DNA from: Macrostomum lignano
Taxonomy: Eukaryota
Reading direction: 5' to 3'
Assembly (NCBI GenBank): GCA_002269645.1
Contig: NIVC01000628.1
Location: forward strand, 124,001-188,000
DNA length: 64,000 nucleotides
Shown here: piece after piece, positions 18,392-60,111 of the stretch
Numbering within the stretch: position 1 is the stretch's first letter
How the letters are laid out: every line of letters starts with the position of its first letter
Program-made: the position numbers and the translations under genes
The notes under the pieces: generated by a model
Database searches by the model: none
The model's input: only the letters and a program-made list of their open reading frames with translations
What the model was told of the DNA's origin: nothing

Positions 18392-21300
18392 ATGGAAGCT
18401 CATTCTGCAACGGAGTCTGCAACAGCTGCTCAGCAGGAGCAAAAACCGGTGAGCAAATGCAGGAAGTGCAGCAGCCACCTTTTCAAATCAAGCGAAGCAA
18501 ATTTTGAATTTTTGAGAAGAGACATTTGTAACCTTTTGAATTAGGGAAAAATTGAGCTTACAAAAAATCTCTCGAATTATGCAAATCAAAGCAGACGTCA
18601 ACTTTATATGCTCTGAATTAAACCGACTGCAGTCGATAATGTGTAGAACGAGTCGACTAGAATGTGATAAAGTTCCTACCTTGGGCTTCTAGGGGGATAA
18701 TATTGGGATTTACGTCTTCAATGGGTCGAAAAACTGACGTCGATCAACTGTTGTTCCGCGTTTCTAGGCAACTGCTCCGACAAGTTGCCGATTGCAGACA
18801 GTCTGGTTCCTGGTTGCCCCACTGTTTGGGTAGCGTAAAATATACATACGTTGAAGCGTATATTTTTGCCAATTGTACTTTTTGATGGGATGCAATACGA
18901 ACGCGAAAATCATGCCAGAAGAGTGGAAAAAAGGGGAACTACCTACTATGCACTCGCTGCCAACCAAATAATTATCAATCTGCTCGTACAATAACGCTAG
19001 GCTTAACTAGATGTTTTTTGTTTTAAATAGTCAATGCAACGACAAAAGAACAGAATGCGAGGGCATGAGTATTTCTAGGAAAGCAAAATCATAGAGAAGT
19101 TTAAATTGGCACCATTTTTATGAGTGTACAAAGACTAGTAGGTAAAGTAGAGTCTACAAGTCTTTAGATTATTTCCTCCCCTTCTTCTTTCCGAAAAAAA
19201 GAACACAATGGCTCTCTCGACGATACTTCGCTTGGCCTTTCAACTACCACTTTACTAAAGGACATTGTGATGGTCGAAAATTGATATTAACTACAAGAAT
19301 TTATGTTTTCAGGTTTGTAGTGATATTTTAAAGTACGAGCGTAAAGAAACAAAGCACCGATCTTCTATGATACAGAAACTTCTCAGAGCTTTTGATATTG
19401 GTTCGTTTTCTTACCGTAAAAAACGTAATTACGGGTTGCGAACTCCAGAAAAGCTACCTGGACGAGCTGCCGTACTACTCCAACTACCAACTGGCCGATG
19501 ACGAGGTGCCCCTGGCCAAGTACCTGCTTCCCGCCGACTCTGCCGAAGTGCAGCGAGGTGTCGAGTCCGGCCGCTTCCCGACGCTCTCCGGCTTGGCGCG
19601 GCTGCAGCGGCAGCGAGGCCAGCCGCCCAATCCGTTGGGCGACGCGGCGAACGAGTCGCCGCCGGCTCCGTTTCCACCGCGACGCACCAAAACGGAGCTG
19701 CTCGAATCGAAGGACTTTACAGAGACGGACAAGTTCGCCGAGTCGGTGACGCCGTTGCCAAGCGACGACTGGGAGCAGCTGGCGGAGCGGCTGTTCGAGC
19801 AGAGCCGCAGCAACCTGGAGAAGGTGAGGGTCGCGTTCTGCTTCGCCTGCGCGCACCGGCAGCTGGCAGAGGTTGCTGAAGAAACTCCGGCATACAAAGC
19901 TATCCGGGAAAATGAGGCGACGGATGTATTTGAGAAGCTGCTTGGGTAAGTTCCATTTTCTGGTCGATGTTTTGGTCTTTTGAATCTTTACATAGAAACT
20001 TTTGACGTGAATATTTTAGTAGTAGAAAAGCAAAAAATGTTATTCTGTATAAGACCACTTGACTTACTTGACTTAGCTGCAGGGCTGTCCCGGAGGGGAC
20101 ACAGCGGGAAGGCGCGGGTGCCCATTCCGCTAGTCCCTGAACGGCCGACGCGTCGCTATGGACGGAGGGTTGGCGCCGCCCAGGGAGGTCTCCCAGTGTC
20201 GCCAGCAGCTATAATGCTCTCTGGAAAGGAGAGATAAGACCATAAGACCAGGTTACAAGTAGATTGTCGAATGAGTTCATCATATCCTCATAGGTGACCC
20301 TTAGACCCATAGACAAATAGGAAGCCCTCTAAGAGCGTAGTACAGAGGCAAACCCAAAGGAATCCTCACAGTCGACGTTTCAAAATCAATGTTCCATGCT
20401 GTACGCTCATTATTCAACGCTTCGGAATCATTATTTAAGGCTACTAAAATGCTTTCATGGTACAATGGTTAGTGGTGTATATGGTTTTGAGGTAGACAAT
20501 GATTCGTTTTTCACGAGTGGCTACGCGCACTCGTCACATTGGCCATTAATTTAAATTCTCGCTTCATAATAGCTGTACGAGTATTGATTGAATTGTCTAT
20601 AGTCGAAACAGGACTTTCAGTTAATGACCAGCCATTAAGCAAAGGTCATTACCGTGAAGTGACATTTCGATCAATAAAGTTTATTCAGCGAATATTAACC
20701 AAGACTATCTGATGATAAAAACATTAGTCAGTGTCTTTTACATTGACTTTAGCATTTCGATTCGTTTCCAAGGATTCGAAACTAATTTTTTCAGCTGTGG
20801 AAAAGTGCCAAACAAGAAGCTTTACGGCTACAAAAAGGGTGCGGACTCCGACTCTGGCGTAAAGGCCGAACTCGGTGGCTGTTGGTTCGCGTGCTACGTT
20901 GAGGGCGAATGGCGATTCGTTGACCCGCACTGGGGTGCTACGGCTGTGATGAACCACGATTCCGGCAGATATGGCTCCATTGACGATAAGGGCCGAGTCA
21001 GCAGTGCCAGAGAACAGAAGGGACAGAGCGTATTTTACCGTGATGAGTTTCACTTCCTGACTGATCCAGAAAGGCTGATCACAAACCATTGTCCACAACA
21101 GCATGATCTGGAGTGGCAGCTGCTAGCGAGGCCACTCAGTATTGAAGAATTTGAACTTTTTCCTCGCTACTTTGGAGGTTCTGCCATAGAAATGGAATTC
21201 TACGATCTGGAGCCGATAAACTATCCTTATAACGTCATCGTAGCAAAGCCGGGACCCGTTGAGATTCTGTTGAAGGAGCGATCGGGAGAACAGTATAGGT

Positions 21301-24300
21301 ACAGCGGGCAGCTAAAGATACACAAGAAGCACATCAACAGTGAATCAAAGACAGCCATTTTGAGTGCCCATCAGGAGAAGGCCTGCATCAGCAAGGGGAT
21401 CCGTGTGTCAAAGGATACCGTCAAGTTCATCTTTGAGCCACCATATCCAGGACAATACGCTCTGGAAATCATTCTCTGGCGTCAGGTCAGTGAGGTTACG
21501 CTAACTGGATGTAAGTTCCTTACGTATACGATCCACTGCCCTCAAAACTGGGAATCGGTCGATGTCATCCCGGAGGGCCAGGAAAATCTTCGCGAGTTCG
21601 GACCAGGACAAGACCTTCAACGAGCTGGACTAACCTCAGAAGCGCCCGGAGAGCTGAAGGCTGCCGACGGAGAGGCATCGCTGGAAATTGCACCGCTTGA
21701 TGAGGACGAAAAACCTAGTAGTGACCATCTGAGGTGAGAGACTATGAGAGCCACATTCTATACTGAGAAATCAGAAAACAAACAGTTAGGGCATGGCTAC
21801 TATTCAATACGATTCCCTGCAGACAACAAATCACCACAGCAAACAGACAATAATCAGTTAGAATCTTCATACGCTCGTAAAAACATCATTTTCTGTGGCA
21901 TAAGACCAGCAAGACATCATTCAAATATTGATTTTGTGGTTATACTAACCAACAGAAAAAAATGAATCAATAACCAGCCAATTAAAAAATCTGATTCCGA
22001 CAATATTTACATTGCAGAAGTCTGACGTGCCAAGCGCTGGGTCCGGACAACAAGCCCCTGCCGACGGGCAGCGTGCTCGTGTGGCGCGACGATCGCCGCA
22101 ACGCCTTCCTGTTCCTGGCGCCCGATTCCGGCTACTACGCTCTGGTGCTCTACGAGAACGGTCGGCCCGTCGGCCAGTTCCTGGTGGACGCCAGCAGCGA
22201 AGCCAAGGACGGCGCGAGCTTCCCGCTGCCCGACTGGAGCCGTGTCGGAGGTCTCGGACTCGCCGCTGTAAACAAGGCGGACGGCGGAGGCTGTCGGCTG
22301 GTGCCACTGAGCCACCAAACGCCGTACGTTCGAACCGAAGAGTTCGAGTTGGCGATGCGCTTCGGTGTTGATGGCGCAGGCGAAGAAGGCGACGCAGGTA
22401 TCGAATTGAAGTCGGAGATGCTGGGTGTCGGAGCGGACGGAGGGACCGAGTCGGTCGGCGACTACTCGTTAGTGAGCGGCGTCGAGGGCGGCGGCTTCGA
22501 GGTGCGGTGCCGGTTCCCGAGAGCGGGCCACTACCTGCTCCGCCTGTCGTTCCGAGAGAGCGGCGGAGACTGGCGCCCGTACTTCACGTACTTCGTGCGA
22601 GCTGTGGGCCAGCTGGACGGATCGGCATCCGCGTTTCCGAGCCTCGGTGCGGACTGGCCGGTCGGCGGAGCGCTCATCGAGCCGCTGGACCGCACGCTGT
22701 CCGTTGGACAGCCGACGCCGATATGCCTCCGTCTCGTGGATTCCGCAGCTATCGGCGCTGTGGAGGTGGTCGACGAGCGAAGCGGCAGTCGGGAGCCGTT
22801 GAGTCGCGACCCGCAGGACCCGCGGTTGTGGTTCGGGTCCGTGACGGCATCTGCGGGTAACACCGATGGAGCGAACGCTGCCGGGAGCGGCGGCGTGACG
22901 GTGGTGGCCCGTGTCAACGACGGCGTTGAGACACAGCTTGTAAAGTTCGACGTCGAGTCGGGAAGCAGCGCGGAGGCCAAGGCGGCGGCACTGCGCGAAG
23001 CTCGGGAGCTAAACGAGCGACGTCGGGTGGCCGAGGAGAATCGGCAGCGGAAGCGGGAGAACCGGCGCCGCCACGAAGAGGGACTGGAGCCGCTGCCTAC
23101 CCAGGTGCATTTTTTAATCCTACTTGCACATGTATCTCAGATTTTTGCGATTGATTAGTAAATAATGGCACCGATTGATCGCTTATTTCACAAGTTACGC
23201 TTTTACTTTTATCTTTATGTAGGATTCGCTTAAGAAATTGGCTGAAGCAGAAGCTGCTGCAAAAGCGGCGGCAGAGGCAGAAGCCGCAGCCAAAGCCAAT
23301 GCGGCGTCCAACAAGACGTTTGAAAGGGTGGAAGTGGCTTCAAAAAAATCGACTGACTCGAAGGCAGCTTCCAATGAAGCTGTGAAAGCGGCATCCAGGG
23401 CGGAATCTGCCGGTCAGGCGGTGACAACGGCGGGTGCCGCAGTAGAGGCGGCTGTTCAGTCAGCGGCCGAAGCTGCCAGGACTGCGGCTGAAGCTGCGAA
23501 GTCAGGTGAAGTTAAAAAAGCTGCCAAGGCGGCGAAATTAGCGGAGACAGCCGCTCTTGAAGCGAAATCTGCCGCTCAGGCTGCAGTGAGTGCCGCGACC
23601 GATGCGCGTACGGCCGCCAAAGCGTCTGCCGAGGCGGAACAAAAAGCCAAGACGGCGGCCGAGGCGGCGAGAAACGAAGCGGACCAAGCAGCAGTGGAAG
23701 CTGAGAAATCAGGAAATGACCAAACCAAAAAGGCCGCTCAAAATGCCGCAACACTGGTCGATGAGGCGGAAGCTAAATTGAAGACGTCAAAGGAGGCTTC
23801 AGAAAAGGCTGCCGCGGAAGCTGACGCCGCAAGTAAGAAGGCCGCGAAGGCCTCCTCAGATTCTGAGGCTGCAAGCAAATCGTTAGCTGAAGCGAATGCG
23901 GCAGCGACAACAGCTGCTGAAGCAGCAGCAGCGGCAAAGGCAGCCGAGGCAGAAGCTGCGGCGGCAGCGAAGGAAGAGGTCAAACTTCTCATTTCTCAGC
24001 TAGACGAGGCGCTGCTTAGTAGAAAAGTTGTTCAGTTGCGCAAGGCGATCAAGGCTTTGGAACCGCACGAGTTTGGATTGCACCGCTATCACGAAAGGAA
24101 ACTGCGGGAAGCTCGGCTGACACTGACTGCGCTGCAGAATAGGAAGGGTGCGTGAGGAACGACGAGGTTGTACAGTCCGATTTCAATGAGGAGTTCATAG
24201 TTTTGTGGTTTACATCCAGGTCAACATTCAGTTGAAATTCTCAATGAAGTCATACGAAAGCCTGATACAGGTATAGAGGATTAGAGACAAACCAGATTGG

Positions 24301-26062: not shown

Positions 26063-26768
26063 ACTCCAGTCTATCTAAAGACGACGAAAGGCCCCCCCAG
26101 AAAAACGACTGTGATTTTCCTAGACGCAGCACAATAGTTATCCAAGGACCGCTGGTAGCTAGTAAGAGGACGTGACACACAATCCTGGCTTTCTAAGATT
26201 TAAGGATCTTATAATGATTTTAATATTCATCAAGCTCATTAAAGAGGCAAGAAGGGTTTACATTTTCTTTCTTGTGACCAGTAATTGTTCTTATTATTTA
26301 TATTGAAACATGTATCTTTATATACGAGTAGGTTCTTCTTTTTGTGAGCTAAAGTGCCACATGTACTTTTAATATATTTTTTTTCCACTTGACCGAAGAG
26401 AAGTATATACGAACTAAGTAATAATTGCCTAGATTATATCATTGCAAAGAACTTTTACCCAGACAAAATGACAAGTCAAAACGGCCATTATTACACTATT
26501 CAGCAGCAGATTTTTCAAACTGATAAGAGCAGGCATACTGCTATGATTTTATTAAGCTAATTAAAAGTTTATGACTAGCGAATTCAACTGGCCCTCGCCA
26601 CGCGTAATCAATGTACACCATACTCTCTGTCTAAGTGACCAATCAGTTCACCCACCCCATCTCTCGTTCAATTTAAGTGTAAAAAACGACGTTCTAACTC
26701 GTCCTTGTGTTCTGTCTGCTGGATAAAAGTTCTTTATAATGTGCTTGTATAGTATGCTGCATCGTTGA

Positions 26769-26819
26769 ATAATGGCCAGAAACACACGTGCTACGCGCAC
26801 TCGTGTTTTTCGCCATTAT
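26769..26819 (+). repeat. Longer copy of the same hairpin element (ATAATGGC...GCCATTAT)
   Basis: 8-bp terminal stem plus an imperfect inner stem around CTACGCG. Confidence 0.6.
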
Positions 26820-27617
26820 AAAACTCCGCAACATACTATACAATCTACCGTGCTGTTCGATTCTTTTATAACAGATCGCGTTCCTAGATTTTTAAGAGAG
26901 TTGATTTCACATCTAGCTACTTAAACAAAAGTGAAAAGTCGCCACCCTTTGCCCCAGTGAGCAGTGTCTTTCGACCAGCGTCTATCACCTGGCCAACCAT
27001 TTTGATAGTAAAAAAAGCTTGAAAAAACAATGAAAACCGGGCGGAAGCTTCAAATCCATCCGATCTTTGCCTCCACGAGTCCACTCCTCCCAATCCCTCC
27101 TCACCCAGCCCAACTCTGCGTCCCGTGGCGCAAGTTGCGTCACTCAAAAATCAATATAACTGTGCTCGAATTTACTGCGCATTCTCAAATGGTGACGACT
27201 TTTTAATTTTGTTGAGTATAGATGTGCCTGCTCCATTGCCAACCTTCTCCTCTTATTTATGATTCAATTATTACCAAGTTTTTCGATAGAATTCTCGCAT
27301 TAATTTGTGACGGAAGTCAACAAGCGGTCTTAATAAACTTTTGCCTGATTTCACCTAAAGAGATATGGTGTGAGATTCTTCTTTTCTGAAGTTCTCTTCA
27401 AGGCAAAATTACTAAATTAGATTCAAAATTTGATGAGCTGGGCAAGAGATAAGAACTCTTCAAAAGCTGATACAGTATCTGAGAAACACTCTGTGATAGC
27501 ACAGCGGGATCGGTTAAACACTTCTTGAGAATATTTAAGCATTGGCAACTTGAGCGAGCAGAGAAAATCCAGGCAAGAGAAAAGGCTTCAGTGATTAGAC
27601 AGTATCCGCTCCCGACC

Positions 27618-30600
27618 ATGGAAACTGCTGAGTCTGGCATGGTAAGTACTGGCACACTTAAATTTCAATTAGCATTGAGTCGTGTTTACAATCCGATTGT
27701 TGGTTTCTTTTCATTCAAATAATAATTCATTCATTGAACTTGAATGCATTCTTCGCTCGTTCCAAAACAAGATTTTGCCTCAAATTTTTTGTAAGTACCG
27801 GGTACGACTCTCAGACCCACCAGCTCGTCTTTGACTCCTCTTCTCCTTCATATTCATCCTCCATCCAACCCCCATGATACCTATCATGTCGTCTCCAAAC
27901 CTATCATATCGTCTCCATACCCTCTCGTCTCCATCTAGTCTCCATACCCTCCATCTAGTCTCCATACCCTCCATCTAGTCTCCATACCCTCCATTTAGTC
28001 TCCATACCCTCCATCTAGTCTCCATACCCTCCATCTAGTCTCCATACCCTTCATCTAGTCTCCATACCCTCCATCTAGTCTCCATACCCTCCATCTAGTC
28101 TCCATACCCTTCATCTAGTCTCCATACCCTTCATCTAGTCTCCATACCCTCCATTTAGTCTCCATACCCTCCATCTAGTCTCCATACCCTCCATCTAGTC
28201 TCCATACCCTCCATCTAGTCTCCATACCCTCCATCTAGTCTCCATACCCTCCATCTAGTCTCCATACCCTTCATCTAGTCTCCATACCCTCCATCTAGTC
28301 TCCATACCCTTCATCTAGTCTCCATACCATCCATATAGTCTTCAAACCCCTGAGTAGTCCCTGAGTTGGTCCTATAATATTTGGTTAGCAGACCTGTAAT
28401 TGAGCGCAAGGTTGCTTGCTGCTTTCAGTTAAGATGCGCTGAACAGAAATTTACAATTTAGAAATTTAGCAGTTTTGTCTGAGACAGTGAGAGAATGCTT
28501 TTTGTATCAATTGACTTAGGCGAGCTACCTGGACGACCTGCCGTACTACTCCAACTACCAACTGGCCGATGATGAGGTGCCCCTGACCAAGTACCTGCTT
28601 CCCGCCGACTCTGCCGAAGTGCAGCGAGGCGTCGAGTCCGGCCGCTTCCCGACGCTCTCCGGCTTGGCGCGGCTGCAGCGGCAGCGAGGCCAGCCGCCCA
28701 ATCCGTTGGGCGACGCGGCGAACGAGTCGCCGCCGGCTCCGTTTCCACCGCGACGCACCAAAACGGAGCTGCTCGAATCGAAGGACTTTACAGAGACGGA
28801 CAAGTTCGCCGAGTCGGTGACGCCGTTGCCAAGCGACGACTGGGAGCAGCTGGCGGAGCGGCTGTTCGAGCAGAGCCGCAGCAACCTGGAGAAGGTGAGG
28901 GTCGCGTTCTGCTTCGCCTGCACGCACCGGCAGCTGGCAGAGGCTGCTGAAGAGAAGCAACCGTATGAAAATATTCGACTTGGAAACTGCAGCGAAGTTT
29001 TTGCCGCGCTACTTATGTAAGATTGCCAAGCCATACTAGAAATCGTTCACTCGCACCAATGTTTCAGGTTCCAGAATAAATAAAAATGCAATATTTGACG
29101 CGCTTTCAGCAATTATCTACGAGTGTGTCACTAAATTTGGTAACCCACAGTAAGACAGGCCTGCATGACATTCGAGTTGTGCATGCCAACTATTGTTAAG
29201 TGGGCTGAGGACCCAACTGCAAGGCCATGAATGATACACGTATTTCACCAACTCTCTTTGATCATACATGCGCACAATCGGCACAATCAGCACTGAGCCT
29301 CAGTGCGGCCTTGCCAAGCCTCCAAATTTCATCAGCGCGTCGACCGCATGTGCCTGCATCAGCTGTGACTTCGTTGGTCACTGGCCTTCACCGAGGCGAA
29401 GCTTCTGAACATTCAACAGGTGACACCAGGTAACTATGGACACCCTGTTGCAACAACAACAACAAAGTACTTCACCCGCCAGCCACACAGTGGCTAGAAA
29501 GAGGGGAAAAGTCAGAGAGCGCGTCTCTGGGCCATAGCCCTCAGAAAGTCACAACCCCCAGCTTGGTCCAGGGCGCCAGCATCGGTCAAAAGCCTATCAG
29601 GGTATCTCGCCGTTCGCCCTTGGCCTCGCCTGCGCGGTCCCTGCAGCTTGAGCAGCAGCACCTCGTGCAGCGGCTCAGGGCAGCGAGCCTCCGACCGGAT
29701 GACGTGGCCAGCCAGTCGAAGTCGCCGCAGGTCAGAAGGCCGCATCATGCCCTTGTGTAGAGGCGTGCCCTCGTGTAGAAAGCGGCGTTGGTCTCGCTGC
29801 CGGAACCGCTGCGCACTCCGAAAGCCGCACGCAGCATGGCCGCATGCGCAGCGTCCAGCTGCCTCTCCTAAGCGTCCGTCAGGGTCCAGATCTCGGTGTT
29901 GTACAACAAGACAGTCTCAACGACTGCCTGAAACAGCCGAGCTTTGAGCCCGTCATCCAGGGCCTCAGAATGGAGCGCGGAGCGCACAGAACGAAACGCG
30001 GCACAGGCCAGGCCTTGTCTTCTCACCAGGTTGTCGGCAACGTCCGGCACGAGGCCGCCGAGGTACAGGAACCGCTGGCAACGGGTAAGCATGATTGCCT
30101 CCCGGGCAGCGTCTCGGTAATTGATCTCGACAGGCAGGTTGGAGGACACCGTGAAGACTACCGTCTTCCGTGCGTTCAGCATGAGGCCGACTCGCGATGC
30201 TGCTGCCGTCAGGCCATCCAGCAGCCGCTGAGCGCCTTCAGCCGACGATGACAGCAGCGCGAGGTCGTCCGCGCAGCCGAGAATGGAGAGCCGCTTCTCA
30301 GGGTGCCACCGACTCATGCGTCTTCGCAGCAGGAAGCCGTTGGGTAGGCCGGTCCTCAGTACCCAATCCAGACCAAGCACAAACAGGAAAGGCGCCAGAG
30401 TGTCACCCTGCAGCACGCCTGACGACGTGCTAAATTGGTCCGACAGTCCATCTGGCGTCATCACAGAAGCGGTCGTATCCTGGTACATCAACATGATGGC
30501 GGAAATCAGTTGGTCCGGTTGCAGATTTCTCTATTTTCGCTGATCAAGCCTCAGTGGGCGAACCTCAACTGCTCGACATCCTCAGCTAGTCTCTCAAGCA

Positions 30601-33600
30601 TTCCGTCATCATCCCGATGCCGTCGACACCTTCAACAGATAGCACCAGATGACTTTGCATTTTTCTTCTTCTCTAGATACGAGCTACATTTCTGAAACAT
30701 AAAATTATTTTTACCAGTACCTGTTGAAGGACAGAAGCTCTGCCTGGGTGAAGGCCAGTGACCAAAGAAGTCAGGGCTGATGCAAACACGTGTAGTCGAT
30801 GCGCTGATGAAATTTTGATGCTTGGCAAGGTTGCACTGAGGTGGAGTGCTGCTTGGTGCACAGGGGTGTACTGAATGCACTAGGGAAACTTGGGAATACT
30901 CGGGGAAAGATTCGACCTTCTGGCAGAATCGTTGAATATCTCGACAGTCCAAAAAGCTTGTTTAGCCCGTTTTTCTGAATTTCGTGTGCCTGCGTTGCTC
31001 CGTTCTGGCGCAGCAAAAAAGTTGTCAAGGGGGGGGGGGGTAATTACACCTTGATAGGTCGACGGGCGGAAAAATGGCTTCGGATTCCTACCGTTAAATA
31101 GTCTATGCAAAAAATCCTCTAATAAATTGGGCACTCCTATCCTGTGTACTATTTAACTTGAATAATTTGAAACATTTGCTGATATTATGCGGGAATTATT
31201 GTTAATTATTGCTTGAATCTTTAAGATCACTTTGAAAATGGCTTGAAAATCTCACCTGACCCTATCGGACACAATTTAGCATAGCCGGTGTGCCGATGCA
31301 AGTAATTACCGGCTACAAGAAGGGCATCGGCTATGAGTCTGGGCTCAGGGCACCACTTGGCGGCGTCTGGTTTGCCTGCTACGTCGAGGGCGAATGGCGA
31401 TTCGTAGATCCGCACTGGTCCGCGCAATCCGTCAGCGGTTTCGAGGCAGGCAACTACAGACAGGTGGATGAGCGCGGCCTTGTGAATGATGTAACAGAAG
31501 TCGGCGGCACCACAGTCTACGATCTCAACGAGTTCTGGTTCCTGACTGACCCGCACCAGTTCGTTGTCAGTCACTTCCCCAGCGAAGACCAGCTCGAGTG
31601 GCAGCTGCTGGCCAGGCCGTTGCAATTTGAAGAGTTCGAAGAAATGATCGACTACTTTGACGGCACGGAAACGGAGATGAACGTCTACCAGCTAGAAACA
31701 GTCAGTCATCCAAAAAACGTCATCATTTCAAAGCCCGGATCCGTAGAAATCCTGCTCCGAGAACTTACTAATGAGCAGTACATGTACGAAATGCTGCTGA
31801 AAATACACAAGAAGCACATTGCTGACGGATCGAACTTGGCGCATTTGACTGCCTACCAACAGAAGGCCTGCGTCAGCATAGAGACTGCAGCATTATTTCT
31901 TACTTTTGAAATACAGGCGTAGCTACTGAACTATTACCAATTGCAGAAATTTGACGTGCCAAGCGCTGGGTCCGGACAACAAGCCCCTGCCGACGGGCAG
32001 CGTGCTTGTGTGGCGCGACGATCGCCGCAACGCCTTCCTGTTCCTGGCGCCCGATTCCGGCTACTACGCTCTGGTGCTCTACGAGAACAGTCGGCCCGTC
32101 GGCCAGTTCCTGGTGGATGCCAGCAGCGAAGCCAAGGACGGCGCGAGCTTCCCGCTGCCCGACTGGAGCCGTGTCGGAGGTCTCGGACTCGCCGCTGTAA
32201 ACAAGGCGGACGGCGGAGGCTGTCGGCTGGTGCCACTGAGCCACCAAACGCCGTACGTTCGAACCGAAGAGTTCGAGTTGGCGATGCGCTTCGGTGTTGA
32301 TGGCGCAGGCGAAGAAGGCGACGCAGGCATCGAATTGAAGTCGGAGATGCTGGGTGTCGGAGCAGACGGAGGGACTGAGTCGGTCGGCGACTACTCGTTA
32401 GTGAGCGGTGTCGATGGCGGCGGCTTCGAGGTGCGGTGCCGGTTCCCAAGAGCGGGCCACTACCTGCTCCGCCTGTCGTTCCGAGAGAGCGGCGGAGACT
32501 GGCGCCCGTACTTCACGTACTTCGTGCGAGCGGTGGGCCAGCTGGACGGATCGGCATCCGCGTTTCCGAGCCTCGGAGCGGACTGGCCGGTCGGCGGAGC
32601 GCTCATCGAGCCGCTGGACCGCACGCTATCCGTTGGACAGCCGACGCCGATCCGCCTCCGTCTCGAGGACGCCACAGCTATCGGCGCTGTGGAGGTGGTC
32701 GATGAGCGAAGCGGCAGTCGGGAGCCGTTGAGTCGCGACCCGCAGGACCCGCGGTTGTGGTTCGGGTCCGTGACGCCATCTGCGGGTAACACCGATGGAG
32801 CGAACACTGCGGGGAGCGGCGGCGTGACGGTGGTGGCCCGTGTCAACGACGGCGTTGAGACACAGCTTGTAAAGTTCGACGTTGAGTCGGAGAGCAGCGC
32901 AGAGGCCAAGGCGGCGGCACTGCGCGAAGCTCGGGAGCTTAACGAGCGACGTCGGGTGGCCGAGGAGAATCGGCAGCGGAAACAGGAGAACCGACACCGC
33001 CGCGATAAGGGACTGGAGTCGCTGCCTGTTTGGGTACTTAATAAAGTTGTTCTGCCATCGGTTTTATCTCGAAATGCATTTGTTCGAAATATTTTTGGTA
33101 TTTTTTATCCTTTTCCTGACAGAGTCACGCTGAGGTGAGAGCTGCTGCCGATTTGGCTGCAAAAAGGCTGGCCTTGGCGTACGAGAAAGAAGAAAAAAGA
33201 GCAAAAGCTTTTGCGAAATCAGCTGCGGCAGAAAGAGCTCAAGCTCAGAGCCTAGCAGCAGCAAAAGCAGCGGCTGAAGCCAAAGCGGCTTTGAAAGCGG
33301 CAGCAATGGAGGCATCAAAGTTGGCGGCTTTAGCACTCGCGGTGTCGAGGGCGGTGGCCGAGTCCCAATCGGCAGTATTGGCGGCTGCTGATGAGGAACT
33401 GGAAACAAAGACCGCGGCTGATGCGAAGGATATCTCGGCGGCATCGTATCGATCGGAAATGACTGAGAAGGCGGCTGTCAAAGCCAAATTAGCGGCTGAG
33501 TCAGCGAACGACGTGGCAGCCGAATTGCAGGCGCTTGCAGCTGCAGCAGCAGAAGAAAAAGTGACTGCCAGTTCGGCAGCTGATGCGGCTTCAAAAGCGG

Positions 33601-35395: not shown

Positions 35396-36596
35396 ACTTT
35401 AAACTCACACTTCTTTGCTAAAAGTAGACAAATAGTATAGCATTTCCCAGTCAATTTGGTCCGCGCCCCTGATTTCCTTCTCCGTCAGCAGTGACAAAGC
35501 TGGCGCTACTTTCCGAGTCACTCGTTATTGCTATTGCTTATTAACGGCTTTTAAAATGAATACGCGAAATAAGTGCCCCCAGGATTAAATTGAGTGGAAC
35601 GAAACAGCATATTTGGCCATAGACATACCTCTAGTGACGGCGGAATGAATTGGAATTCTCTATTGCGGATTAAATTGAGTGCTTCTAGGACCAAATTGAC
35701 CGAGAAATGCTATTTTTCAAAACTGAATTTTCAAACGCATTGAAATCATGGGAAATCATCCCAAGAGCAATTTTGCAGTCAAATTTATCAATCAATTGAG
35801 ACTACGATATTCAAACCTGTCGAATTCCAAATGATTTTGTAAACATTACAGAAGATTTTGACTTTTTCATCGTTTTAGCAACATTCGTGTACTGTACGTG
35901 CTTTAAATACCTGCCGAAATTTTTTTCTGTGCAAACGAAAGTCCAAGACTGCCACAGACAACTTTTGGGCTTTCGACCACAGACAAAATTTTGTCGGGTA
36001 TTATAGAATTTAACCATCACGAGTGAACGTGAAGGAATCCCATTGTTAGATGAGTCATCGTGAAGCAATGCACAAAACCGTGCAGGAATGCATTTCTTCG
36101 CCTAATGCTTTTTCAGTGAGATTTTACCATACTCGTTGACATCCACTCATGCACGCAAAAGCGTGCAAGAATGCCATTCCTGCATGGAGAATCAGCCGAC
36201 AATGAGACATGGACGCCATAGATATTTTTGAGCTTATCGAGGCTGATATAGCCTGGCTAAAAACACATAGCCGCAAATAATGAGACCAGTTTGATGGGTG
36301 CTGCACCACAATGCTCTAGATTTGCGACCTTCAACAAAGATCAGATTGCTGAAAAGATCGACGCCGCAGTGCCTGCCAATACGAAGAGGAAGAAGAAATG
36401 GGCCGTCAAGCCAAATGAGCCGTCAAGTCCAGACATGAGGCCATCCTGAACGGCGGACACACTGGATTGCTGGTGCTCAAGCCAATTGAAGAGTGAAGCA
36501 ACGCCGAATGGGCCTACTAGCTGCGGATGATTTGAGGCAGGACTCAATTTGAGACCAGTTACATGAAATCTGACCATAGACTACGCGAAAGTAAGG

Positions 36597-36654
36597 CATC
36601 CTACCATGGACTTCTATACTTAGCATGCTAAGTATAGAAGTCCATGCATCCTAC
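36597..36654. mobile_element. Perfect 42-bp palindrome (36605..36646) flanked by the 8-bp direct repeat CATCCTAC; ultra-short TIR-only element
   Basis: CATGGACTTCTATACTTAGCA|TGCTAAGTATAGAAGTCCATG is self-complementary with no mismatch. CATCCTAC occurs at 36597-36604 and 36647-36654. Confidence 0.75.
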
Positions 36655-36963: not shown

Positions 36964-38009
36964 TTATACACCAGGCGTCTTCCAGCACATGACGATATGG
37001 CGACCAATCTTGAAGAAAAATGACAGCCCAGGCTCGTGGCTATAGCTGGCCCAGTACTGTCCCGTAACCATGACAACGTGCCAAAGCTTGCCGAACTGGC
37101 CGTCCAGCTTCTGCTTCAGCCGGCCAGCGACATCTTTCTCATCTTTGCCGCGTCTCTGGGCGTCGCGAAATATTTCAGTCAGGTCCACCTGCATCTCTAG
37201 GCCCATGCTGGAGGCGATGACGGTGACGTCCTCCGGCAGCCGGTTACTCCTCAGACACTCGGCCTTGAGCTGGTTGAGTCGGTAGATTCGCCTAGGTTAG
37301 GAAAATGCGATGGGTTGCTTTCGTGCGTTACCACGAGTTCATTCGACGCATTGCACGAAGTTGGGTTTTGCGAGCTAATGATGACGCAGCAATATGTGCT
37401 CTAAAGAATAAAAAGTTCAATTGAATCATGAAAAACAGTATACAGTCTTACGCTTGCTTCGGATTGAGCCCCAGAACGTTGCAGTATTCGTCCAGTGTAA
37501 TCGCGCCGTCATCGTTCTCATCAAATAGCTTCATCCATTTCTGAAAAAGCGAATTCGGTAAATGCCATGACTTGGTTGTTTGTGTGTAACTATTACTCAA
37601 TACTATCTGCGAGTCTGATGAATGCAGCTAAATAACATTTCAGCGACCATTTTACCTACCTTGATACCAACATAAGATCTGTTAGATCAGTTTAAACCCT
37701 TAAATACCGGAGTCCGGATCACCGTGTGAATAAGTACACAAAGCGTTGGAAACACTGGAAGCTACAAACCTCGCCAAAATTGGCCTCAAACTGGCTGCTG
37801 CTGGTCATGTAGGCCGCTAATTCATCCGGTGTGATGGACTCGCTCCGATCCTTGTCGACCGCAAAGAACGCATCAAGGAAGGGATTCTGTGCAGCTGCCT
37901 CCTCTGCTGCGACGCGTCCCGGTGACAACGGCGGTGGAGCAGGCGATGTTGAGCCCGAAGCGGAGGCAGTGGAGTGCGCTGGCGACACAGAGAGCGACAT
38001 GCTTCGCAT
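36964..38009 (-). CDS. Tegument allergen-like (TAL) protein: two EF-hands plus a dynein light chain-like domain; exons 37770..38009, 37452..37540, 36964..37291 (218 aa)
   Basis: EF loops DKDRSESITPDE and DENDDGAITLDE. DLC-like region LKQKLDGQFGKLWHVVMVTGQYWASYSH..FFFKIGRHIVMCWKTP. GT-AG introns in phases 0 and 2. Confidence 0.9.
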
Positions 38010-39991: not shown

Positions 39992-42972
39992 ATGCCAGAA
40001 GGAAACATTTTACAAGTACTAGACTACTACAAAAATTATGAGCTAGAAGGAGATGAAATTCCATTAAATAACTATCTTTTGAGTTCCCCAAAAGGATTTC
40101 CAACTTTGCGCAGCCTGGTTGACAGTCAGCTGCAAGCTGCCAAACCGAGTGCGGCGAGGGCCAACCAGCCACAGCCAACTCCGTGTAGCAGACGAAAAGA
40201 AGAGCTGTTTCAGATTCAGAAATTCACCGATATTGATCAGGCAGCAGAGTCGGTGCAACTGAACTGGCAGGACGGCTGGGAGACGCTTTCTCAGAAATTG
40301 TTTCGGAATTCGACCGGCGATCTCGAAAAAGTGCGCTCTGCTTTTGTGTTTACCTGCAGAGACTGGAACAACGGACTGCCAGCTCGCAACAAAGAGAGCT
40401 CAGCGTATAGGCTTATTCGAGAGAGAAACTATGCAGAGATTTTTGAGAACTTGGTCAGGTAAGGACTGCTCATTCTGAAGAGTTCAGGTTCAGTCATTCA
40501 GTTTGTTAAGGAAATTAATTTTTGTAGCAAATTGTGTGTAAAGATTGTTGAAGAAGAGCACGTGAAGCCTGTATGTACGATTTGATGCGAGAGTGCCTTG
40601 AAAGTGCTAAATTTTTATTTTAGAAAAGAGACTATCGCATTGGGAGTGAAACCTAGTAGATTAGCCTCTTAGCAGACCAGTGTCTTAGTAAACCAGTGTC
40701 TTAGTAGACCAGTGTCTTAGTAAACCAGTGTCTTAGTAGACCAGTGTCTTAGTAAACCAGTGTCTCAGTAGACCAGTGTCTTAGTAGACTAGTGTCTTAG
40801 TAGACCAGTGTCTTAGTAAACCAGTGTCTCAGTAGACTAGTGTCTTAGTAGACTAGTGTCTTAGTAGACCAGTGTCTTAGTAAACCAGTGTCTCAGTAGA
40901 CCAGTGTCTTAGTAGACCAGTGTCTTAGTAGACCAGTGTCTTAGTAGACCAGTGTCTTAGTAAACCAGTGTCTCAGTAGACCAGTGTCTTAGTAGACTAG
41001 TGTCTTAGTAGACCAGTGTCTTAGTAAACCAGTGTCTTCGTAGACCAGTGTCTTAGTTGATCAGTGTCTTAGTAAACCTGTGTCTTAGTTGATCAGTGTC
41101 TTAGTAGACCAGTGTCTTAGTAAACCAGTGTCTTAGTAAACCAGTGTCTTAGTTGATCAGTGTCTCAGTAGACCAGTGTCTTAGTAGACCAGTGTCTTAG
41201 CAGACCAGTGTCTTAGCAGACCAGTGTCTTAGTAGACCAGTGTCTTAGTTGATCAGTGTCTTAGTAAACCTGTGTCTTAGTTGATCAGTGTCTTAGTAGA
41301 CCAGTGTCTTAGTAAACCAGTGTCTTAGTAGACCAGTGTCTTAGTTGATCAGTGTCTCAGTAGACCAGTGTCTTAGTAGACCAGTGTCTTAGCAGACCAG
41401 TGTCTTAGCAGACCAGTGTCTTAGTAGACCAGTGTCTTAGTTGATCAGTGTCTTAGTAGACCAGTGTCTTAGTAAACCAGTGTCTCAGTAGACCAGTGTC
41501 TTAGTAGACTAGTGTCTTAGTAGACCAGTGTCTTAGTAAACCAGTGTCTTAGTAAACCAGTGTCTTAGTAGACCAGTGTCTTAGTAGACCAGTGTCTTAG
41601 TAGACCAGTGTCTTAGTAAACCAGTGTCTCAGTAGACCAGTGTCTTAGTAGACTAGTGTCTTAGTAGACCAGTGTCTTAGTAAACCAGTGTCTTCGTAGA
41701 CCAGTGTCTTAGTAAACCAGTGTCTCAGTAGACCAGTGTCTTAGTAGACCAGTGTCTTAGCAGACCAGTGTCTTAGCAGACCAGTGTCTTAGCAGACCAG
41801 TGTCTTAGCAGACCAGTGCACCGAGAGTCTTGAGGCTCGATCGCACCTCCATAAAATGGAGTAAATTTTTGCGTGATCACGCAACTTGTAAATATTCTTT
41901 AGTCCCTTTGTGCGCGAGTGCTGCGACTTGACGGCTCATTTAGCGTAGCGGTGCACTAACCAAGAGTGACTTAGTGAGCCTTTTCCCATATTAATGAAAG
42001 TATAGCAAACGCAGGAAAATATTTCAGAGCCGGAGGCGTACCAATAGAACGAATCGAAGGCTGGAAGAAGTCTGCAGACTCCAAAGTTGGCTTCCATGTC
42101 AGACGATCGGTAAATCCTTGGCACGCCTGCTTCGTGAGCGGAGAATGGCGACTGGTTGACGTCCATTGGGCTGCCTCATCGGTATTCAGCAGCCGCTCTG
42201 GTAGATACCAAGAGCTGGACAAAGATGGCGAGTTGTCCCAGACCCTGACAGCCAGTGAGACCCCTCAGATTGAGGAGAAATTTGGCCGTAACGAGTTTTT
42301 CTTTCTAACTGATCCCGAGAAGCTGGTAATGAGCCACTACCCGGACAATAGGAGCTGGCAGCTGCTGAAGAAGCCCATCGCGAAGCTCGAGCAGTTCGAG
42401 CAGATGCCGCACTATTTTGCCGGCTCTGAGCAGGCCATGCCGCACTGCTGGCAGGTGGAGCCGCTCAACTATCTGAAAAATGTCATTCTAGCTGAAGAGG
42501 AAGGCCGAGTTGAGATTCTGTTCAGGTAATTTATTTTACAATTTTGGACGTGCAAACTTTTCAACAGCTCGTCGTACACCCGTACAAAGTGCCGATTGGA
42601 ATGGACATTGCAGAGTGCCTGACGCCGAGCTGCTTCGAGATTTAGAATTCGATGCCAAGGTCAGCATCGCCAGCAGGTGCTTGTCGAGTTCTGATGCGCC
42701 GGCATCCAACAGGTTGAAACATGGCAGAATCATTCGCTGCGACCGGCTTGGTCCTGCACCATCGGACATTGTCCGGGTTGTGTTTCGGTCACCTTGCGCT
42801 GGCAAGTTCGCTCTGACAGTTCGAATTAAAAAGAAGTATGGAGGCAGCGGCTGGGCTCGACTGGCCACCTACATTGTGCACTGTCCTGTGGTAGGTGTCC
42901 CGTGGTTTGTCTGCCTCAGTCTGCCTTTCCTTAGTCTAGGGAAAGCCATGTGTTTCTCTGTCATCAGCATTG

Positions 42973-43063
<91 letters not shown>

Positions 43064-45132
43064 TATCATCATCATCATACTGTGCAATTTTATTTTCAAC
43101 ATTACGAGCGTATTAGAGATCGCCTACTGAAGAGTAGCAAGTAAAGAATTTTAAGCGACTTATGTTGCGTGCGAAAGGCGCACTAAAAGTTTTGAATTAT
43201 TAAAGTTTATTACAATTTATAAAAAAATTGAAACCATCTGTTTCAAAAAGCAGTCCTTGTCTATCGTGAGTTACACTTGCACTTTCCTGCTAATCTGTGA
43301 AATTATATTGTTAATGCAGGTATCTAAAGAATCAAAATTATCAAAGTCATCTCAACCGCCAAATCCAGAACCAGAGTCAGAGTGCGGCCCAAATCTCAAA
43401 ACAAGGATCAGTGATCATAGATCCGCCAAATCAAGACACAAATCCAAAGCCATATTCAAGGCCAAATTCAGATCTAGATGCAACTCCAAAACCAGAGCCA
43501 AAACCATACATCTGGAGCCAAAACCGGAGTTCAAGCCCTTTGGGTCGAAAGTTTCCAATGGGAAATTTGACCAGAGAGCAACTAGCTCAGTTGCGCAGCT
43601 ACCCGAAGCCGCCAAAATGGGAATTCAAGGCGGTCAAAGCCATACTGCTCATGCTGGGCTTTTACGAAGGACGGAGCAACGTGAGTGGCAGGACGGTTTT
43701 GTAGGGTGGCAACAATTTCAAGCATACGAAACGTTTGCTAATTTAAATTTCAGAAATGGGTCCGCTGTCAGCAACTAATCTCTGCCATACCTCAGGCGGC
43801 CAACGATTTAATTATCGAATCCGTTCATCCGGAAATCGCTGCCAGATGCCTGCAACTCGTCCAGTCGAAATCTGGTACGCCAGCGGCCAAGGATAACCCG
43901 GAAGAGAAAGCTTCGTATATCTTCAGGGAGTGGGTGAGTTCGCGATGCAATTGCGATGTGACTGAGGGTCAGGGCATGAGATAGGTGTCGGGAGGGGCAG
44001 AGGGGCAGCGCGTGAGGTGGGTGTCGGGAGGGGCAGGGGAGCACGTGGAGGTGGGTGTTAAGAGGGGCAGAGAGGCATGGCAGCGCGTGAGGTTTCGGGA
44101 GGGGCAGGGGGAGTGCGTGGAGGTGGGTGTTGAGAGGGGCAGAGAGGCATGGCAGCGCGTGAGGTTTCGGGAGGGGCAGGGGGAGTGCGTGGAGGTGGGT
44201 GTTGAGAGGGGCAGAGAGGCATGGCAGCGCGTGAGGTTTCGGGAGGGGCAGGGGGAGCACGTGGAGGTGGGTGTTGAGAGGGGCAGAGAGGCATGGCAGC
44301 GCGTGAGGTTTCGGGAGGGGCAGGGGGAGTGCGTGGAGGTGGGTGTTGAGAGGGGCAGAGAGGCATGGCAGCGCGTGAGGTTTCGGGAGGGGCAGGGGGA
44401 GTGCGTGGAGGTGGGTGTTGAGAGGGGCAGAGAGGCATGGCAGCGCGTGAGGTTTCGGGAGGGGCAGGGGGAGTGCGTGGAGGTGGGTGTTGAGAGGGGC
44501 AGAGAGGCATGGCAGCGCGTGAGGTTTCGGGAGGGGCAGGGGGAGTGCGTGGAGGTGGGTGTTGAGAGGGGCAGAGAGGCATGGCAGCGCGTGAGGTTTC
44601 GGGAGGGGCAGGGGGAGTGCGTGGAGGTGGGTGTCGGGAGTGGCAGGGGAGCGCGTGGAGGTGGGTGTCGGGAGTGGCAGGGGAGCGCGTGGAGGTGGGT
44701 GGTCGGGAGTGGCAGGGGAGCGCCTGGAGGTGGGGTGTCGGGAGGGGCAGGAGGAGCGCGCAAGGTGTGGGTATCGGGAACGGGTCTTTAGTTTCAATTT
44801 ATTCGCTGGAATAAAATTTCTGTCAAAACTTTATGTATGCAATCTAACATTAAATTCTCAAGGTTGAAAAGAACGCCAACGCAGTCAAGGAGGTGACGCC
44901 GCCCGGCGAGTTCAAAGCAGCTGACAAACAGCGGCAGGTGCAGCTGTTCGGCATCACACCCGAGGAGGAGGCCCATTGGGACTGGGAGGACAATATAAAA
45001 AAGTCTGAAGTGGCCCAGAAATTCATCTGCTTTTGCGACTATTGTCACGTTGCGATCTATAATAACGATTTAAAGATCCACCTGCACTGCAACGTGTCCA
45101 GAGCGAATGGCTTGCGCAAAAATGCACTGTGA
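39992..45132 (+). CDS. Hillarin/KY-like paralog C (shorter, divergent); exons 39992..40458, 42028..42525, 42614..42890, about 43330/43369..43680, 43754..43933, 44863..45132
   Basis: Motifs DLEKVRSAF, YAEIFENLV, GWKKS, WHACFVSGEWRLVDVHW, FFFLTDPE, WQLLKKP, LAQLRSYPKP..VKAILLMLG and KWVRCQQL. It lacks the equivalents of A/B exons 4 and 5. The acceptor of the fourth exon is ambiguous. Confidence 0.72.
40670..41818. repeat. 16-bp minisatellite (ACCAGTGTCTTAGTAG), about 70 copies
   Basis: Seen directly in a paralog C intron. Confidence 0.97.
42963..43078. repeat. (CAT)n trinucleotide microsatellite
   Basis: Intronic; source of the poly-I, poly-H and poly-M ORFs. Confidence 0.97.
43985..44760. 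repeat. G-rich 72-bp minisatellite with degenerate flanking subunits
   Basis: Period of 72 bp between 44101 and 44173; lies in the last intron of paralog C. Confidence 0.95.
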
Positions 45133-46845: not shown

Positions 46846-55110
<8,265 letters not shown>

Positions 55111-59962: not shown

Positions 59963-60111
59963 GCGACCCTATTACAATCAGTAGCACTATATGACCTTAA
60001 CAGCAATATTTTGGGCACAAATAATCCATGAGAGTATATGGCAAAACAAAGATCATTTTGAGTTATTTTTCAGTAACAAGCAGCCGTTAAACACTTTATC
60101 ATATCAGGTGG

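What the first reader, a model, noticed from the sequence alone, without database searches (positions are those of the whole stretch)
36597..36654. Perfect spacerless 42-bp palindrome with an 8-bp target-site duplication
CATCCTAC-[CATGGACTTCTATACTTAGCA TGCTAAGTATAGAAGTCCATG]-CATCCTAC. An 8-bp duplication is characteristic of hAT and P-type transposases (established). The insert appears to be nothing but two fused 21-bp terminal repeats, so it could be a minimal transposon or a hairpin-intermediate repair product. Perfect symmetry implies a recent origin, and it could extrude as a cruciform.
Basis: partly seen in the sequence, partly recalled or inferred. Interest (0 to 1): 0.72.

Follow-up and report, generated by a model that had tools for sequence, protein, structure and literature searches.

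The report
Transposon excision scar in a flatworm
The 42-bp perfect palindrome between two copies of CATCCTAC is real, and it is most likely the repair scar left when a P-element-type "cut-and-paste" transposon jumped out of this site in the flatworm Macrostomum lignano; this is a known kind of scar, not a new kind of element.

Summary
CATCCTAC (36597-36604), a perfect spacerless 42-bp palindrome (36605-36646) and CATCCTAC (36647-36654) are all present, and chance does not explain them.

The window is Macrostomum lignano assembly Mlig_3_7, contig NIVC01000628.1:124001-188000. Three other paralogous or redundant contigs carry the identical 58 bp, although their flanks differ from the window by 0.6-2.2%. 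The structure is therefore genuine genomic sequence. It is older than the split between these copies, so it is not a recent event. No empty site was found.

About 545 bp away, the other three contigs carry a polymorphic 2.1-kb element that the window lacks. It has 116-bp terminal inverted repeats, an 8/9-bp target duplication, a THAP domain and a P-transposase HTH remnant. Its tip, CAGGGACAACTAAA, matches the palindrome arm, CATGGACTTCTATA, at 10 of 14 positions in fixed register.

Published Drosophila P-element excision junctions have the same architecture: an 8-bp duplication, 14-17 nt of each inverted repeat joined head to head, then the 8-bp duplication again.

Best reading (about 0.6): an end-joined excision footprint of a P-superfamily element. 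The main rival is a mobile repeat-only mini-transposon. I could not exclude it because the whole genome was not searchable with these tools.

The parts
36597..36604 (.). Left copy of the 8-bp target-site duplication, CATCCTAC
   Evidence: Read directly. Identical in the three other contigs.
36605..36625 (+). Left arm, CATGGACTTCTATACTTAGCA. Interpreted as the outermost 21 nt of the left terminal inverted repeat of the excised element.
   Evidence: In fixed register it matches the tip of the neighbouring P-like Element A at 10 of the first 14 and 11 of 21 positions (binomial p about 3e-4 and 6e-3).
36626..36646 (-). Right arm, the exact reverse complement of the left arm, joined to it with no spacer. 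The centre reads GCATGC.
36647..36654 (.). Right copy of the 8-bp target-site duplication, CATCCTAC
   Evidence: Read directly. Identical in the three other contigs.
36052..36060 (-). Context: the unoccupied target site (CGATGACTC on the minus strand, single copy) of the P-like Element A. The other three contigs carry that element here, flanked by two copies of CGATGACTC.
36964..38009 (-). Context: EF-hand plus dynein-light-chain gene (BOX15_Mlig028751g1 in this contig). Its stop codon lies about 318 bp from the palindrome, which therefore sits in the 3' flank of the gene.

Best explanation
This is an excision footprint of a P-superfamily (P-element/THAP9-like) cut-and-paste transposon.

Proposed sequence of events:
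1. An element whose terminal inverted repeats begin CATGGACTTCTATACTTAGCA inserted here and duplicated the 8-bp target CATCCTAC.
2. Its transposase later cut it out. P-type transposases cut the transferred strand exactly at the element tip and the other strand many nucleotides inside the repeat (17 nt in Drosophila). Each broken chromosome end therefore keeps the target duplication plus a 3' single-stranded tail made of the outermost repeat nucleotides.
3. The two tails have the same sequence. After fill-in or annealing at a self-complementary motif, end joining produces: duplication, tip, inverted tip, duplication. That is a perfect spacerless palindrome.

Here 21 nt of each tip survive. This implies either a stagger of at least 21 nt in this family, or a few nucleotides of repair synthesis copied from a sister copy before joining.

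The scar arose before the paralogous copies of this region separated, and has since been inherited passively.

What is shown: the structure itself; its presence in four diverged copies; a recently active P-like element with a related tip next door; and the identical architecture of experimental Drosophila footprints. What is inferred: that a full element once sat here, and that its transposase makes a long staggered cut.
For: (1) Architecture. An exact 8-bp direct repeat flanks two head-to-head 21-nt arms with no spacer.

(2) Experimental precedent with the same architecture. Tables 1-3 of Chan et al. 2010 (PMC2895639) list sequenced P{wa} excision junctions:
- acccagacCATGATGAAATAAC(AT)GTTATTTCATCATGacccagac, the commonest short-microhomology junction (14 isolates);
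- the (TA) junction (5 isolates);
- a blunt 17+17 join.
Each is an 8-bp duplication, a perfect 30-34-bp palindrome of repeat tips, and the 8-bp duplication again. The same paper states that the ends left by excision carry 17-nt non-complementary 3' overhangs. The review PMC7776569 gives the 17-nt staggered cleavage and the 8-bp duplication.

(3) The superfamily is present and recently active at this locus. The three other contigs carry Element A (L001 11959-14039):
- 2081 bp, with 116-bp terminal inverted repeats 99% identical;
- flanked by duplicated CGATGACTC;
- absent from the window, which has the single, unoccupied site.
It encodes a THAP domain (32.5 bits, E 1.5e-7 after joining two adjacent reading frames; THAP2 structure E 0.006). 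It also encodes a P-transposase HTH remnant (PF12017, 24.4 bits against a cut-off of 23).

(4) Tip similarity in fixed register: CATGGACTTCTATA against CAGGGACAACTAAA, 10 of 14 (p about 3e-4). Like the Drosophila P element, the arm begins CATG.

(5) P elements need internal transposase-binding sites as well as the terminal repeats. A 42-bp tips-only piece is therefore more plausibly a scar than a mobile unit.

(6) It is not an artefact. The identical 58 bp occurs in four contigs whose flanks differ by 0.2-2.2%. The 21-mer occurs nowhere in the bacterial/archaeal, viral or JGI metagenome collections.
Against: No element with exactly these termini was found, and no empty-site or occupied-site allele of this position was found. 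All four available copies carry the scar.

The arms are 21 nt, longer than the 17-nt maximum seen in Drosophila footprints, so an extra assumption is needed (a longer stagger, or limited repair synthesis).

Element A is a different family (11 of 21 identity). Its duplication reads most simply as 9 bp rather than 8. Its assignment to the P superfamily rests on a THAP domain plus a short (25-residue) HTH match, and no catalytic domain is preserved.

Only about 70 kb of non-redundant M. lignano sequence could be examined, so the copy number of the 42-mer in the 764-Mb assembly is unknown.
Confidence: 0.6

Rival explanations
1. It is a minimal, repeat-only non-autonomous transposon (an extreme MITE). 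The 42-bp unit itself was inserted here by a transposase supplied in trans, creating the 8-bp duplication.
For: The anatomy is equally compatible: complete inverted repeats, tips outward, and an exact duplication. Repeat-only MITEs are known in another superfamily, for example human MADE1 (80 bp: two 37-bp repeats and 6 bp between them; own knowledge). A small MITE-like element is polymorphic 900 bp away, so short DNA elements do move in this genome.
Against: There is no second copy at up to 4 mismatches in the window or in the lineage-specific parts of the other contigs. No predicted protein in the 5.8-billion-cluster collection reads through the open frame WTSILSMLSIEVH, although this is a weak test. 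P-type elements need internal transposase-binding sites that a 42-bp unit lacks. No mobile element this small is documented for an 8-bp-duplicating superfamily (own knowledge).
Confidence: 0.15
2. It is a scar or deletion derivative of an element from another 8/9-bp-duplicating superfamily (hAT, Merlin, MULE). One example would be an internal deletion that happened to remove everything between two 21-bp inverted repeats.
For: An 8-bp duplication is also typical of hAT. Merlin gives 8-9 bp and MULEs 9 bp or more (own knowledge). The repeat here can be read as 9 bp, and Element A's duplication reads most simply as 9 bp, with long repeats reminiscent of MULEs.
Against: hAT and MULE transposases form hairpins on the flanking DNA and leave only a few nucleotides derived from the flank. 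This is own knowledge, and the abstract of PMC5499845 listed says that MULE transposition resembles that of hAT and Transib. The arms here are not derived from the flank. CATGG departs from the hAT tip consensus YARNG at position 3. A deletion ending exactly at both inner repeat boundaries with no spacer needs a coincidence that the staggered-cut model does not. The only transposase remnant at the locus is THAP plus P-type HTH.
Confidence: 0.12
3. It is an assembly or library artefact, such as a palindromic linker or a chimeric long read.
For: Synthetic linkers are often perfect palindromes, and Mlig_3_7 was built from PacBio, 454 and Illumina data.
Against: The same 58 bp is at the same position in four contigs whose flanks carry different substitutions and indels. 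The 21-mer is absent from three very large sequence collections, where a common linker would be expected to turn up. A linker would not be flanked by a duplication of the local sequence.
Confidence: 0.02
4. It is a functional palindromic site, either a dimeric protein-binding site or a cruciform-forming regulatory element, kept intact by selection.
For: It is unchanged in four copies. Each strand can form a 19-bp hairpin (-18.2 kcal/mol, z = -9.9). It lies 318 bp downstream of a gene.
Against: The surrounding 450 bp is almost as well conserved: 2 substitutions and 1 indel among three copies. Zero changes in 58 bp is therefore expected without selection. The flanking direct repeat has no role in such a model. 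No Rfam family matches anywhere in the window.
Confidence: 0.03

Closest known systems
End-joined excision footprints of the Drosophila melanogaster P element (P{wa} junctions, Chan et al. 2010, PMC2895639)
   Same: The 8-bp target duplication is kept on both sides. Between the two copies, the outermost nucleotides of the two terminal inverted repeats are joined head to head. With a short self-complementary or blunt join this gives a perfect spacerless palindrome. Both tips begin CATG.
   Different: The arms are 21 nt here, against at most 17 nt in Drosophila. The host is a flatworm. This example is fixed in four paralogous copies of a natural genome rather than recovered in a laboratory cross. 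The parent element has not been identified.
Internally deleted P elements produced by interrupted gap repair (own knowledge; the combined strand-annealing and end-joining repair class described)
   Same: Both ends and the target duplication are retained and the interior is lost. Element A next door (THAP and HTH remnants, no catalytic domain; 2081 bp in L001/L002 and 1856 bp in L004) is of this kind.
   Different: Such derivatives normally keep hundreds of bp at each end, including the transposase-binding sites, and they stay mobile. The 42-bp structure keeps only the tips.
Zebrafish Pdre2 / THAP9 P-like elements
   Same: They are P-superfamily elements outside insects, with an 8-bp duplication, short terminal inverted repeats (13 bp) and many internally deleted copies.
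   Different: No repeat-only scar is described for them in the text I read. Their sequences were not compared here.
MADE1, a repeat-only MITE of the human Hsmar1 mariner family (own knowledge)
   Same: It is a tiny palindromic unit made almost entirely of two terminal inverted repeats.
   Different: MADE1 is 80 bp with a 6-bp spacer and a TA duplication. It has thousands of copies and belongs to Tc1/mariner. Here there is a single locus, no spacer and an 8-bp duplication.
hAT excision footprints (Ac/Ds, Hermes)
   Same: The 8-bp duplication is retained at the empty site.
   Different: hAT footprints contain only a few nucleotides, templated by hairpins on the flank, and not about 20 nt of each element end (own knowledge).

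Membership tests
P-superfamily excision footprint | Both copies of the 8-bp target-site duplication are retained | tested here: met
   CATCCTAC at 36597-36604 and 36647-36654, 8/8 identical. A 9-bp reading is possible only by sharing one G with the palindrome.
P-superfamily excision footprint | Between the duplications there are only the outermost nucleotides of the two terminal inverted repeats, tips outward, joined head to head | tested here: met
   21+21 nt, 100% complementary, 0 nt spacer. This is the same layout as the sequenced Drosophila junctions.
P-superfamily excision footprint | Retained arm length is no greater than the transposase stagger (17 nt in Drosophila) | tested here: inconclusive
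   The arms are 21 nt, longer than 17. The stagger of flatworm P-like transposases is unknown.
P-superfamily excision footprint | A parent element with the same termini exists in the genome | not testable with these tools
   The M. lignano assembly cannot be searched by DNA here. Only about 70 kb of non-redundant sequence was read (window plus L001, L002, L004), and it holds no such element. A related tip (10 of 14) is present on Element A.
P-superfamily excision footprint | P/THAP9-like transposase genes are present in the same genome | tested here: met
   Element A encodes THAP (E 1.5e-7; PDB THAP2 E 0.006) and Tnp_P_element HTH (PF12017, 24.4 bits against cut-off 23). Its presence/absence difference between copies shows recent mobility. 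No catalytic domain is preserved in this copy.
MITE / minimal non-autonomous transposon | Multiple copies at unrelated sites, each with its own target-site duplication | tested here: inconclusive
   There is one locus only in the sequence available. There are no hits in the viral, metagenome or prokaryote collections. The whole genome was not searchable.
MITE / minimal non-autonomous transposon | Presence/absence polymorphism (an empty site with a single copy of the target) | tested here: not met
   All four copies of the locus carry the structure. No outgroup species was available.
hAT transposon or hAT footprint | Tip consensus YARNG and an 8-bp duplication; footprints of a few nucleotides derived from the flank | tested here: not met
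   The 8-bp duplication is met. The tip CATGG has T where R is expected. The 42 bp between the duplications is unrelated to the flank. The hAT consensus and footprint type are from own knowledge.

The most novel reading that the evidence does not exclude
The 42-bp unit is not a scar but the smallest known mobile eukaryotic transposon: two 21-bp terminal inverted repeats and nothing else, mobilised in trans by a flatworm P/THAP9-like transposase. This would imply that, unlike Drosophila P, this transposase needs no internal binding sites. A milder variant: it is a scar, and its 21-nt arms record a staggered cut longer than the 17 nt of Drosophila.
Probability: 0.1. Interest if true: 0.6.

Novelty: new member of a known kind. 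Interest (0 to 1): 0.33.

Why it matters
If the reading is right, this is a naturally fixed P-type excision scar outside insects. It would be indirect sequence evidence that the unusual long staggered cut of P transposase is shared by flatworm P/THAP9-like enzymes.

Together with the polymorphic Element A next door, it shows that P-like DNA transposons were active in Macrostomum lignano both before and after its recent genome multiplication. That matters for understanding the large indel differences between its paralogous subgenomes. It also matters to anyone looking for an endogenous transposase for flatworm transgenesis.

For genome scanning in general, it gives a rule of thumb. A short perfect palindrome bracketed by an exact 8-bp direct repeat should first be read as a staggered-cut excision scar, not as a new element or a recent event.

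Tried and rejected
- **Exact scans for the 21-mer** in the bacterial/archaeal genome, viral and JGI metagenome collections: 0 hits each. This argues against a common linker but says nothing about the flatworm genome.
- **Exact-protein look-ups** of the three short reading frames next to the palindrome, hoping for independent read assemblies or empty-site alleles: none on record.
- **A chimeric query** of six local reading frames. It found only the annotated EF-hand/dynein-light-chain protein, which did give access to the paralogous contigs.
- **A profile of the only frame that stays open across the palindrome** (WTSILSMLSIEVH), meant to find predicted proteins reading through other copies. With random flanks it returned nothing.
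- **My first reading of the 2309-bp difference** between the window and L001/L002, as a single truncated P-like fragment with a one-sided deletion. This was wrong. It is two separate insertions, one of them a complete element bounded by inverted repeats and carrying a target duplication.
- **A search of the solved-structure database** with the HTH-bearing frame: no hit.
- **Ten long ATG-initiated window reading frames** looked up, in order to sample more of the genome: none is in the collection.
- **Literature.** The primary cleavage paper and a footprint paper were not held in the library. The supplement of the assembly paper held no table of transposon classes.
- **Pattern scans of the window.** I looked for other copies of Element A or its tip, for the shared tip pattern CA.GGAC..CTA.A, and for other palindromes bracketed by a duplication. 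Nothing turned up except the finding itself.
- **The self-complementary centre GCATGC** was considered as evidence for microhomology joining and rejected. Every perfect even-length palindrome has a self-complementary centre, so it carries no information.

Full report
**1.

Reading the window gives CATCCTAC (36597-36604), CATGGACTTCTATACTTAGCA (36605-36625), its exact reverse complement (36626-36646) with no spacer, and CATCCTAC again (36647-36654).
- The repeat finder reports the arms as 21 nt, 100% complementary and 0 nt apart.
- The 21-mer has no other match in the window at up to 3 mismatches, against 0.00 expected in shuffles. It has none at up to 4 mismatches either.
- The 8-mer is not rare in itself: 3 copies against 1.33 expected. 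Its position on both edges of the palindrome is what is improbable (4^-8).
- A scan for any perfect palindrome with arms of at least 10 nt bracketed by 8-bp direct repeats found only this one.
- The base before the left repeat and the last base of the palindrome are both G, so a 9-bp reading is possible. Only the 8-bp reading leaves both arms complete.

**2. Where the window comes from**

The window has no tRNA or Rfam matches. It is full of minisatellites and carries intron-bearing eukaryotic genes.
- A reading frame with an epimerase domain matched a Macrostomum lignano UniRef protein at 96% identity.
- A query built from the short frames around the palindrome found BOX15_Mlig008204g3, an EF-hand plus dynein-light-chain protein of M. 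lignano.
- That protein's cluster has members at four loci of assembly Mlig_3_7, GCA_002269645.1.
- One locus, L003, is 100% identical to the window over 21,037 bp. This places the window at NIVC01000628.1:124001-188000, plus strand, and the palindrome at 160605-160646.
- The palindrome lies about 318 bp beyond the stop codon of the gene, which runs on the minus strand (36964-38009). No gene is annotated on its other side for about 10 kb.

**3. It is genuine genomic sequence and it is not recent**

The other three loci are L001 (NIVC01000952.1), L002 (NIVC01002661.1) and L004 (NIVC01001797.1). All of them carry the identical 58 bp.
- In two aligned blocks, of 2.5 kb and 3.5 kb, L001, L002 and L004 differ from one another by 0.16-0.88%. 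They differ from the window by 0.64-2.2%.
- This fits the published description of Mlig_3_7: mostly three paralogous copies with a 2.2% SNP rate, plus some redundant contigs (PMC10733133).
- The structure therefore predates the deepest split among the available copies. An assembly artefact would not recur at the same site in diverged contigs.
- Its perfect preservation needs no selection. The surrounding 450 bp shows only two substitutions and one indel among three copies.
- No empty-site copy was found.

**4. What lies next to it**

Comparing the window with the other contigs shows several insertion/deletion differences close by.
- **Element A.** This is the informative one: L001 11959-14039, 2081 bp, with 116-bp terminal inverted repeats 99% identical that begin CAGGGACAACTAAAACCC. 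It is flanked on both sides by CGATGACTC.
  - L002 has the same element, and L004 has an 1856-bp version.
  - The window has a single CGATGACTC at 36052-36060, the unoccupied site, about 545 bp from the palindrome.
  - On one strand Element A encodes a THAP zinc finger. The frame alone scores 21.8 bits. After joining it to the next frame, which supplies the C-x2-H and PSVF parts, it scores 32.5 bits with E 1.5e-7. It also matches the THAP2 structure at E 0.006.
  - Further downstream there is a remnant of the P-transposase HTH domain (PF12017, 24.4 bits against a cut-off of 23).
  - No catalytic domain is left. Element A is therefore an internally deleted P/THAP9-like element that inserted after the window lineage separated.
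- **Tip comparison.** In fixed register, the tip of Element A and the palindrome arm agree at 6 of 7, 9 of 12, 10 of 14 and 11 of 21 positions: CAGGGACAACTAAA against CATGGACTTCTATA. The binomial p is about 3e-4 for 14 positions and 6e-3 for 21. They are different families, but they share the kind of tip expected of related transposases.

**5. Mechanism**

P transposase cuts one strand at the element tip and the other strand 17 nt inside the inverted repeat. P elements make 8-bp target duplications, and they also need internal transposase-binding sites (review PMC7776569).
- After excision, each chromosomal end carries a 17-nt non-complementary 3' tail, and end joining occurs at these tails (Chan et al. 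2010, PMC2895639).
- The sequenced junctions in that paper's Tables 1-3 are built exactly like this finding:
  - acccagac-CATGATGAAATAAC(AT)GTTATTTCATCATG-acccagac (14 isolates);
  - the (TA) junction (5 isolates);
  - a blunt 17+17 join.

  Each is an 8-bp duplication, a perfect 30-34-bp palindrome made of the two repeat tips, and the duplication again.
- The structure here is the same with 21-nt arms.

I therefore read it as follows. A P-type element inserted at CATCCTAC and later excised, and the two tip-bearing ends were joined. The extra 4 nt per arm need one of two things: a longer stagger in this family, or a few nucleotides of synthesis from a sister copy before joining. The latter is the 'repair synthesis then end joining' class that the same paper describes. 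The self-complementary centre (GCATGC) cannot be used as evidence for a microhomology join, because every perfect palindrome has one.

**6. Rivals**
- **A mobile repeat-only mini-transposon** fits the anatomy equally well and is the main rival. Against it: there is no second copy in the sequence I could read; P elements need internal binding sites; and nothing this small is known for an 8-bp-duplicating superfamily. The 764-Mb genome could not be searched here, so I leave it at about 0.15.
- **A hAT or MULE origin** fits the duplication length. It does not fit about 20 nt of each end being left behind, because those enzymes form hairpins on the flank and leave only a few flank-derived nucleotides. 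Here the arms are unrelated to the flank.
- **An artefact** is excluded by the four diverged copies and by the absence of the 21-mer from three very large collections.
- **A selected binding or cruciform site** has no support. Each strand can fold into a 19-bp hairpin (-18.2 kcal/mol, z = -9.9), but the flanks are conserved to the same degree.

**7.

So are the transposon origin and the mention of P-type transposases. 'Repair product' is close to the mark, but the hairpin mechanism is not the fitting one. 'Recent origin' is contradicted. 'Minimal transposon' remains possible but is less likely.

**8. Novelty and score**

The kind of object, a P-element excision footprint, is well established experimentally. 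A fixed natural example in a flatworm, with 21-nt arms and a recently mobile P-like relative next door, is a new member of that kind. Its interest is modest (0.33). It hints that the long staggered cut is conserved beyond insects, and it documents P-like transposon activity before and after the genome multiplication of M. lignano.

**9. Limits**

The steps that would settle them are listed separately.

Noticed in passing
L001 11959-14039 (also L002 5169-7249 and L004 11966-13821); unoccupied site at window 36052-36060: Polymorphic P/THAP9-like element ('Element A'). It has 116-bp terminal inverted repeats 99% identical, is flanked by duplicated CGATGACTC, and carries a THAP domain and a P-transposase HTH remnant but no catalytic domain. 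It is 2081 bp in L001/L002, 1856 bp in L004 and absent from the window.
   Followed up: yes
L001 14061-14267; site at window 36040-36045: A second insertion, 207 bp, present in L001/L002/L004 only. It lies 15 bp from Element A and is flanked by CAATGG. It has no terminal inverted repeats but contains an internal 34-nt inverted repeat (L001 14064-14146). Its nature is unknown.
   Followed up: partly
window 35438-35712: A 275-bp MITE-like element with 25-bp terminal inverted repeats (TAGCATTTCCCAGTCAATTTGGTCC / GGACCAAATTGACCGAGAAATGCTA). It is present in the window but absent from L001 and L002 (a gap at the same place in the window-versus-L004 BLAST suggests L004 lacks it too, but that alignment was not inspected), and the site is TA-rich. 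The exact target duplication is ambiguous.
   Followed up: partly
whole window: The window is Macrostomum lignano Mlig_3_7 contig NIVC01000628.1:124001-188000 (100% match to L003). The locus exists in four contigs of that assembly, three of them only 0.2-0.9% apart. This agrees with the published paralog and redundancy structure of the assembly.
   Followed up: yes
window 31878 / L001 18139-18586: A 448-bp segment is present in L001 and missing from the window. The junction has 1 nt of microhomology and no inverted repeats, so it looks like a plain deletion or insertion rather than a transposon.
   Followed up: partly
window, about two dozen arrays, e.g. 740-1640, 2109-2903, 5937-6609, 16136-16919, 40667-41818, 44004-44760, 52446-53328, 53910-54825, 59207-59964: Minisatellite arrays are exceptionally dense: periods of 16-107 bp, up to 72 copies, and 51 Tandem Repeats Finder rows. 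The 16-bp array at 40667-41818 differs in length between the paralogous contigs.
   Followed up: no
window 26745-26843: A 99-bp imperfect inverted repeat: 47-nt arms, 79% complementary, 5-nt spacer. There is no obvious target duplication. It may be an old MITE or foldback remnant.
   Followed up: partly
window 20712-23158 and 31296-33138: Two stretches about 10 kb apart encode near-identical reading frames (both contain MRFGVDGAGEEGDAGIELKSEMLGVGADGG...). Each is preceded by a related frame: the first of these (20712-21737) gave a weak, sub-threshold Pfam hit to an Ig-like KY domain, and the second (31296-31922) was related to it only by eye. This indicates a tandem segmental duplication inside the window.
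   Followed up: no
window 29868-30494 (-): This reading frame contains what looks by eye like a reverse-transcriptase motif (…GVLQGDTLAPFLFVL…), probably a fragment of a non-LTR retrotransposon. It was not scanned against Pfam.
   Followed up: no
window 36291-36449 (+): A short frame, RFATFNKDQIAEKIDAAVPANTKRKKKWAV, lies between the palindrome and the Element A site. From memory it resembles the N-terminal motif of Crypton/DUF3504-type proteins. Pfam gave no hit.
   Followed up: partly
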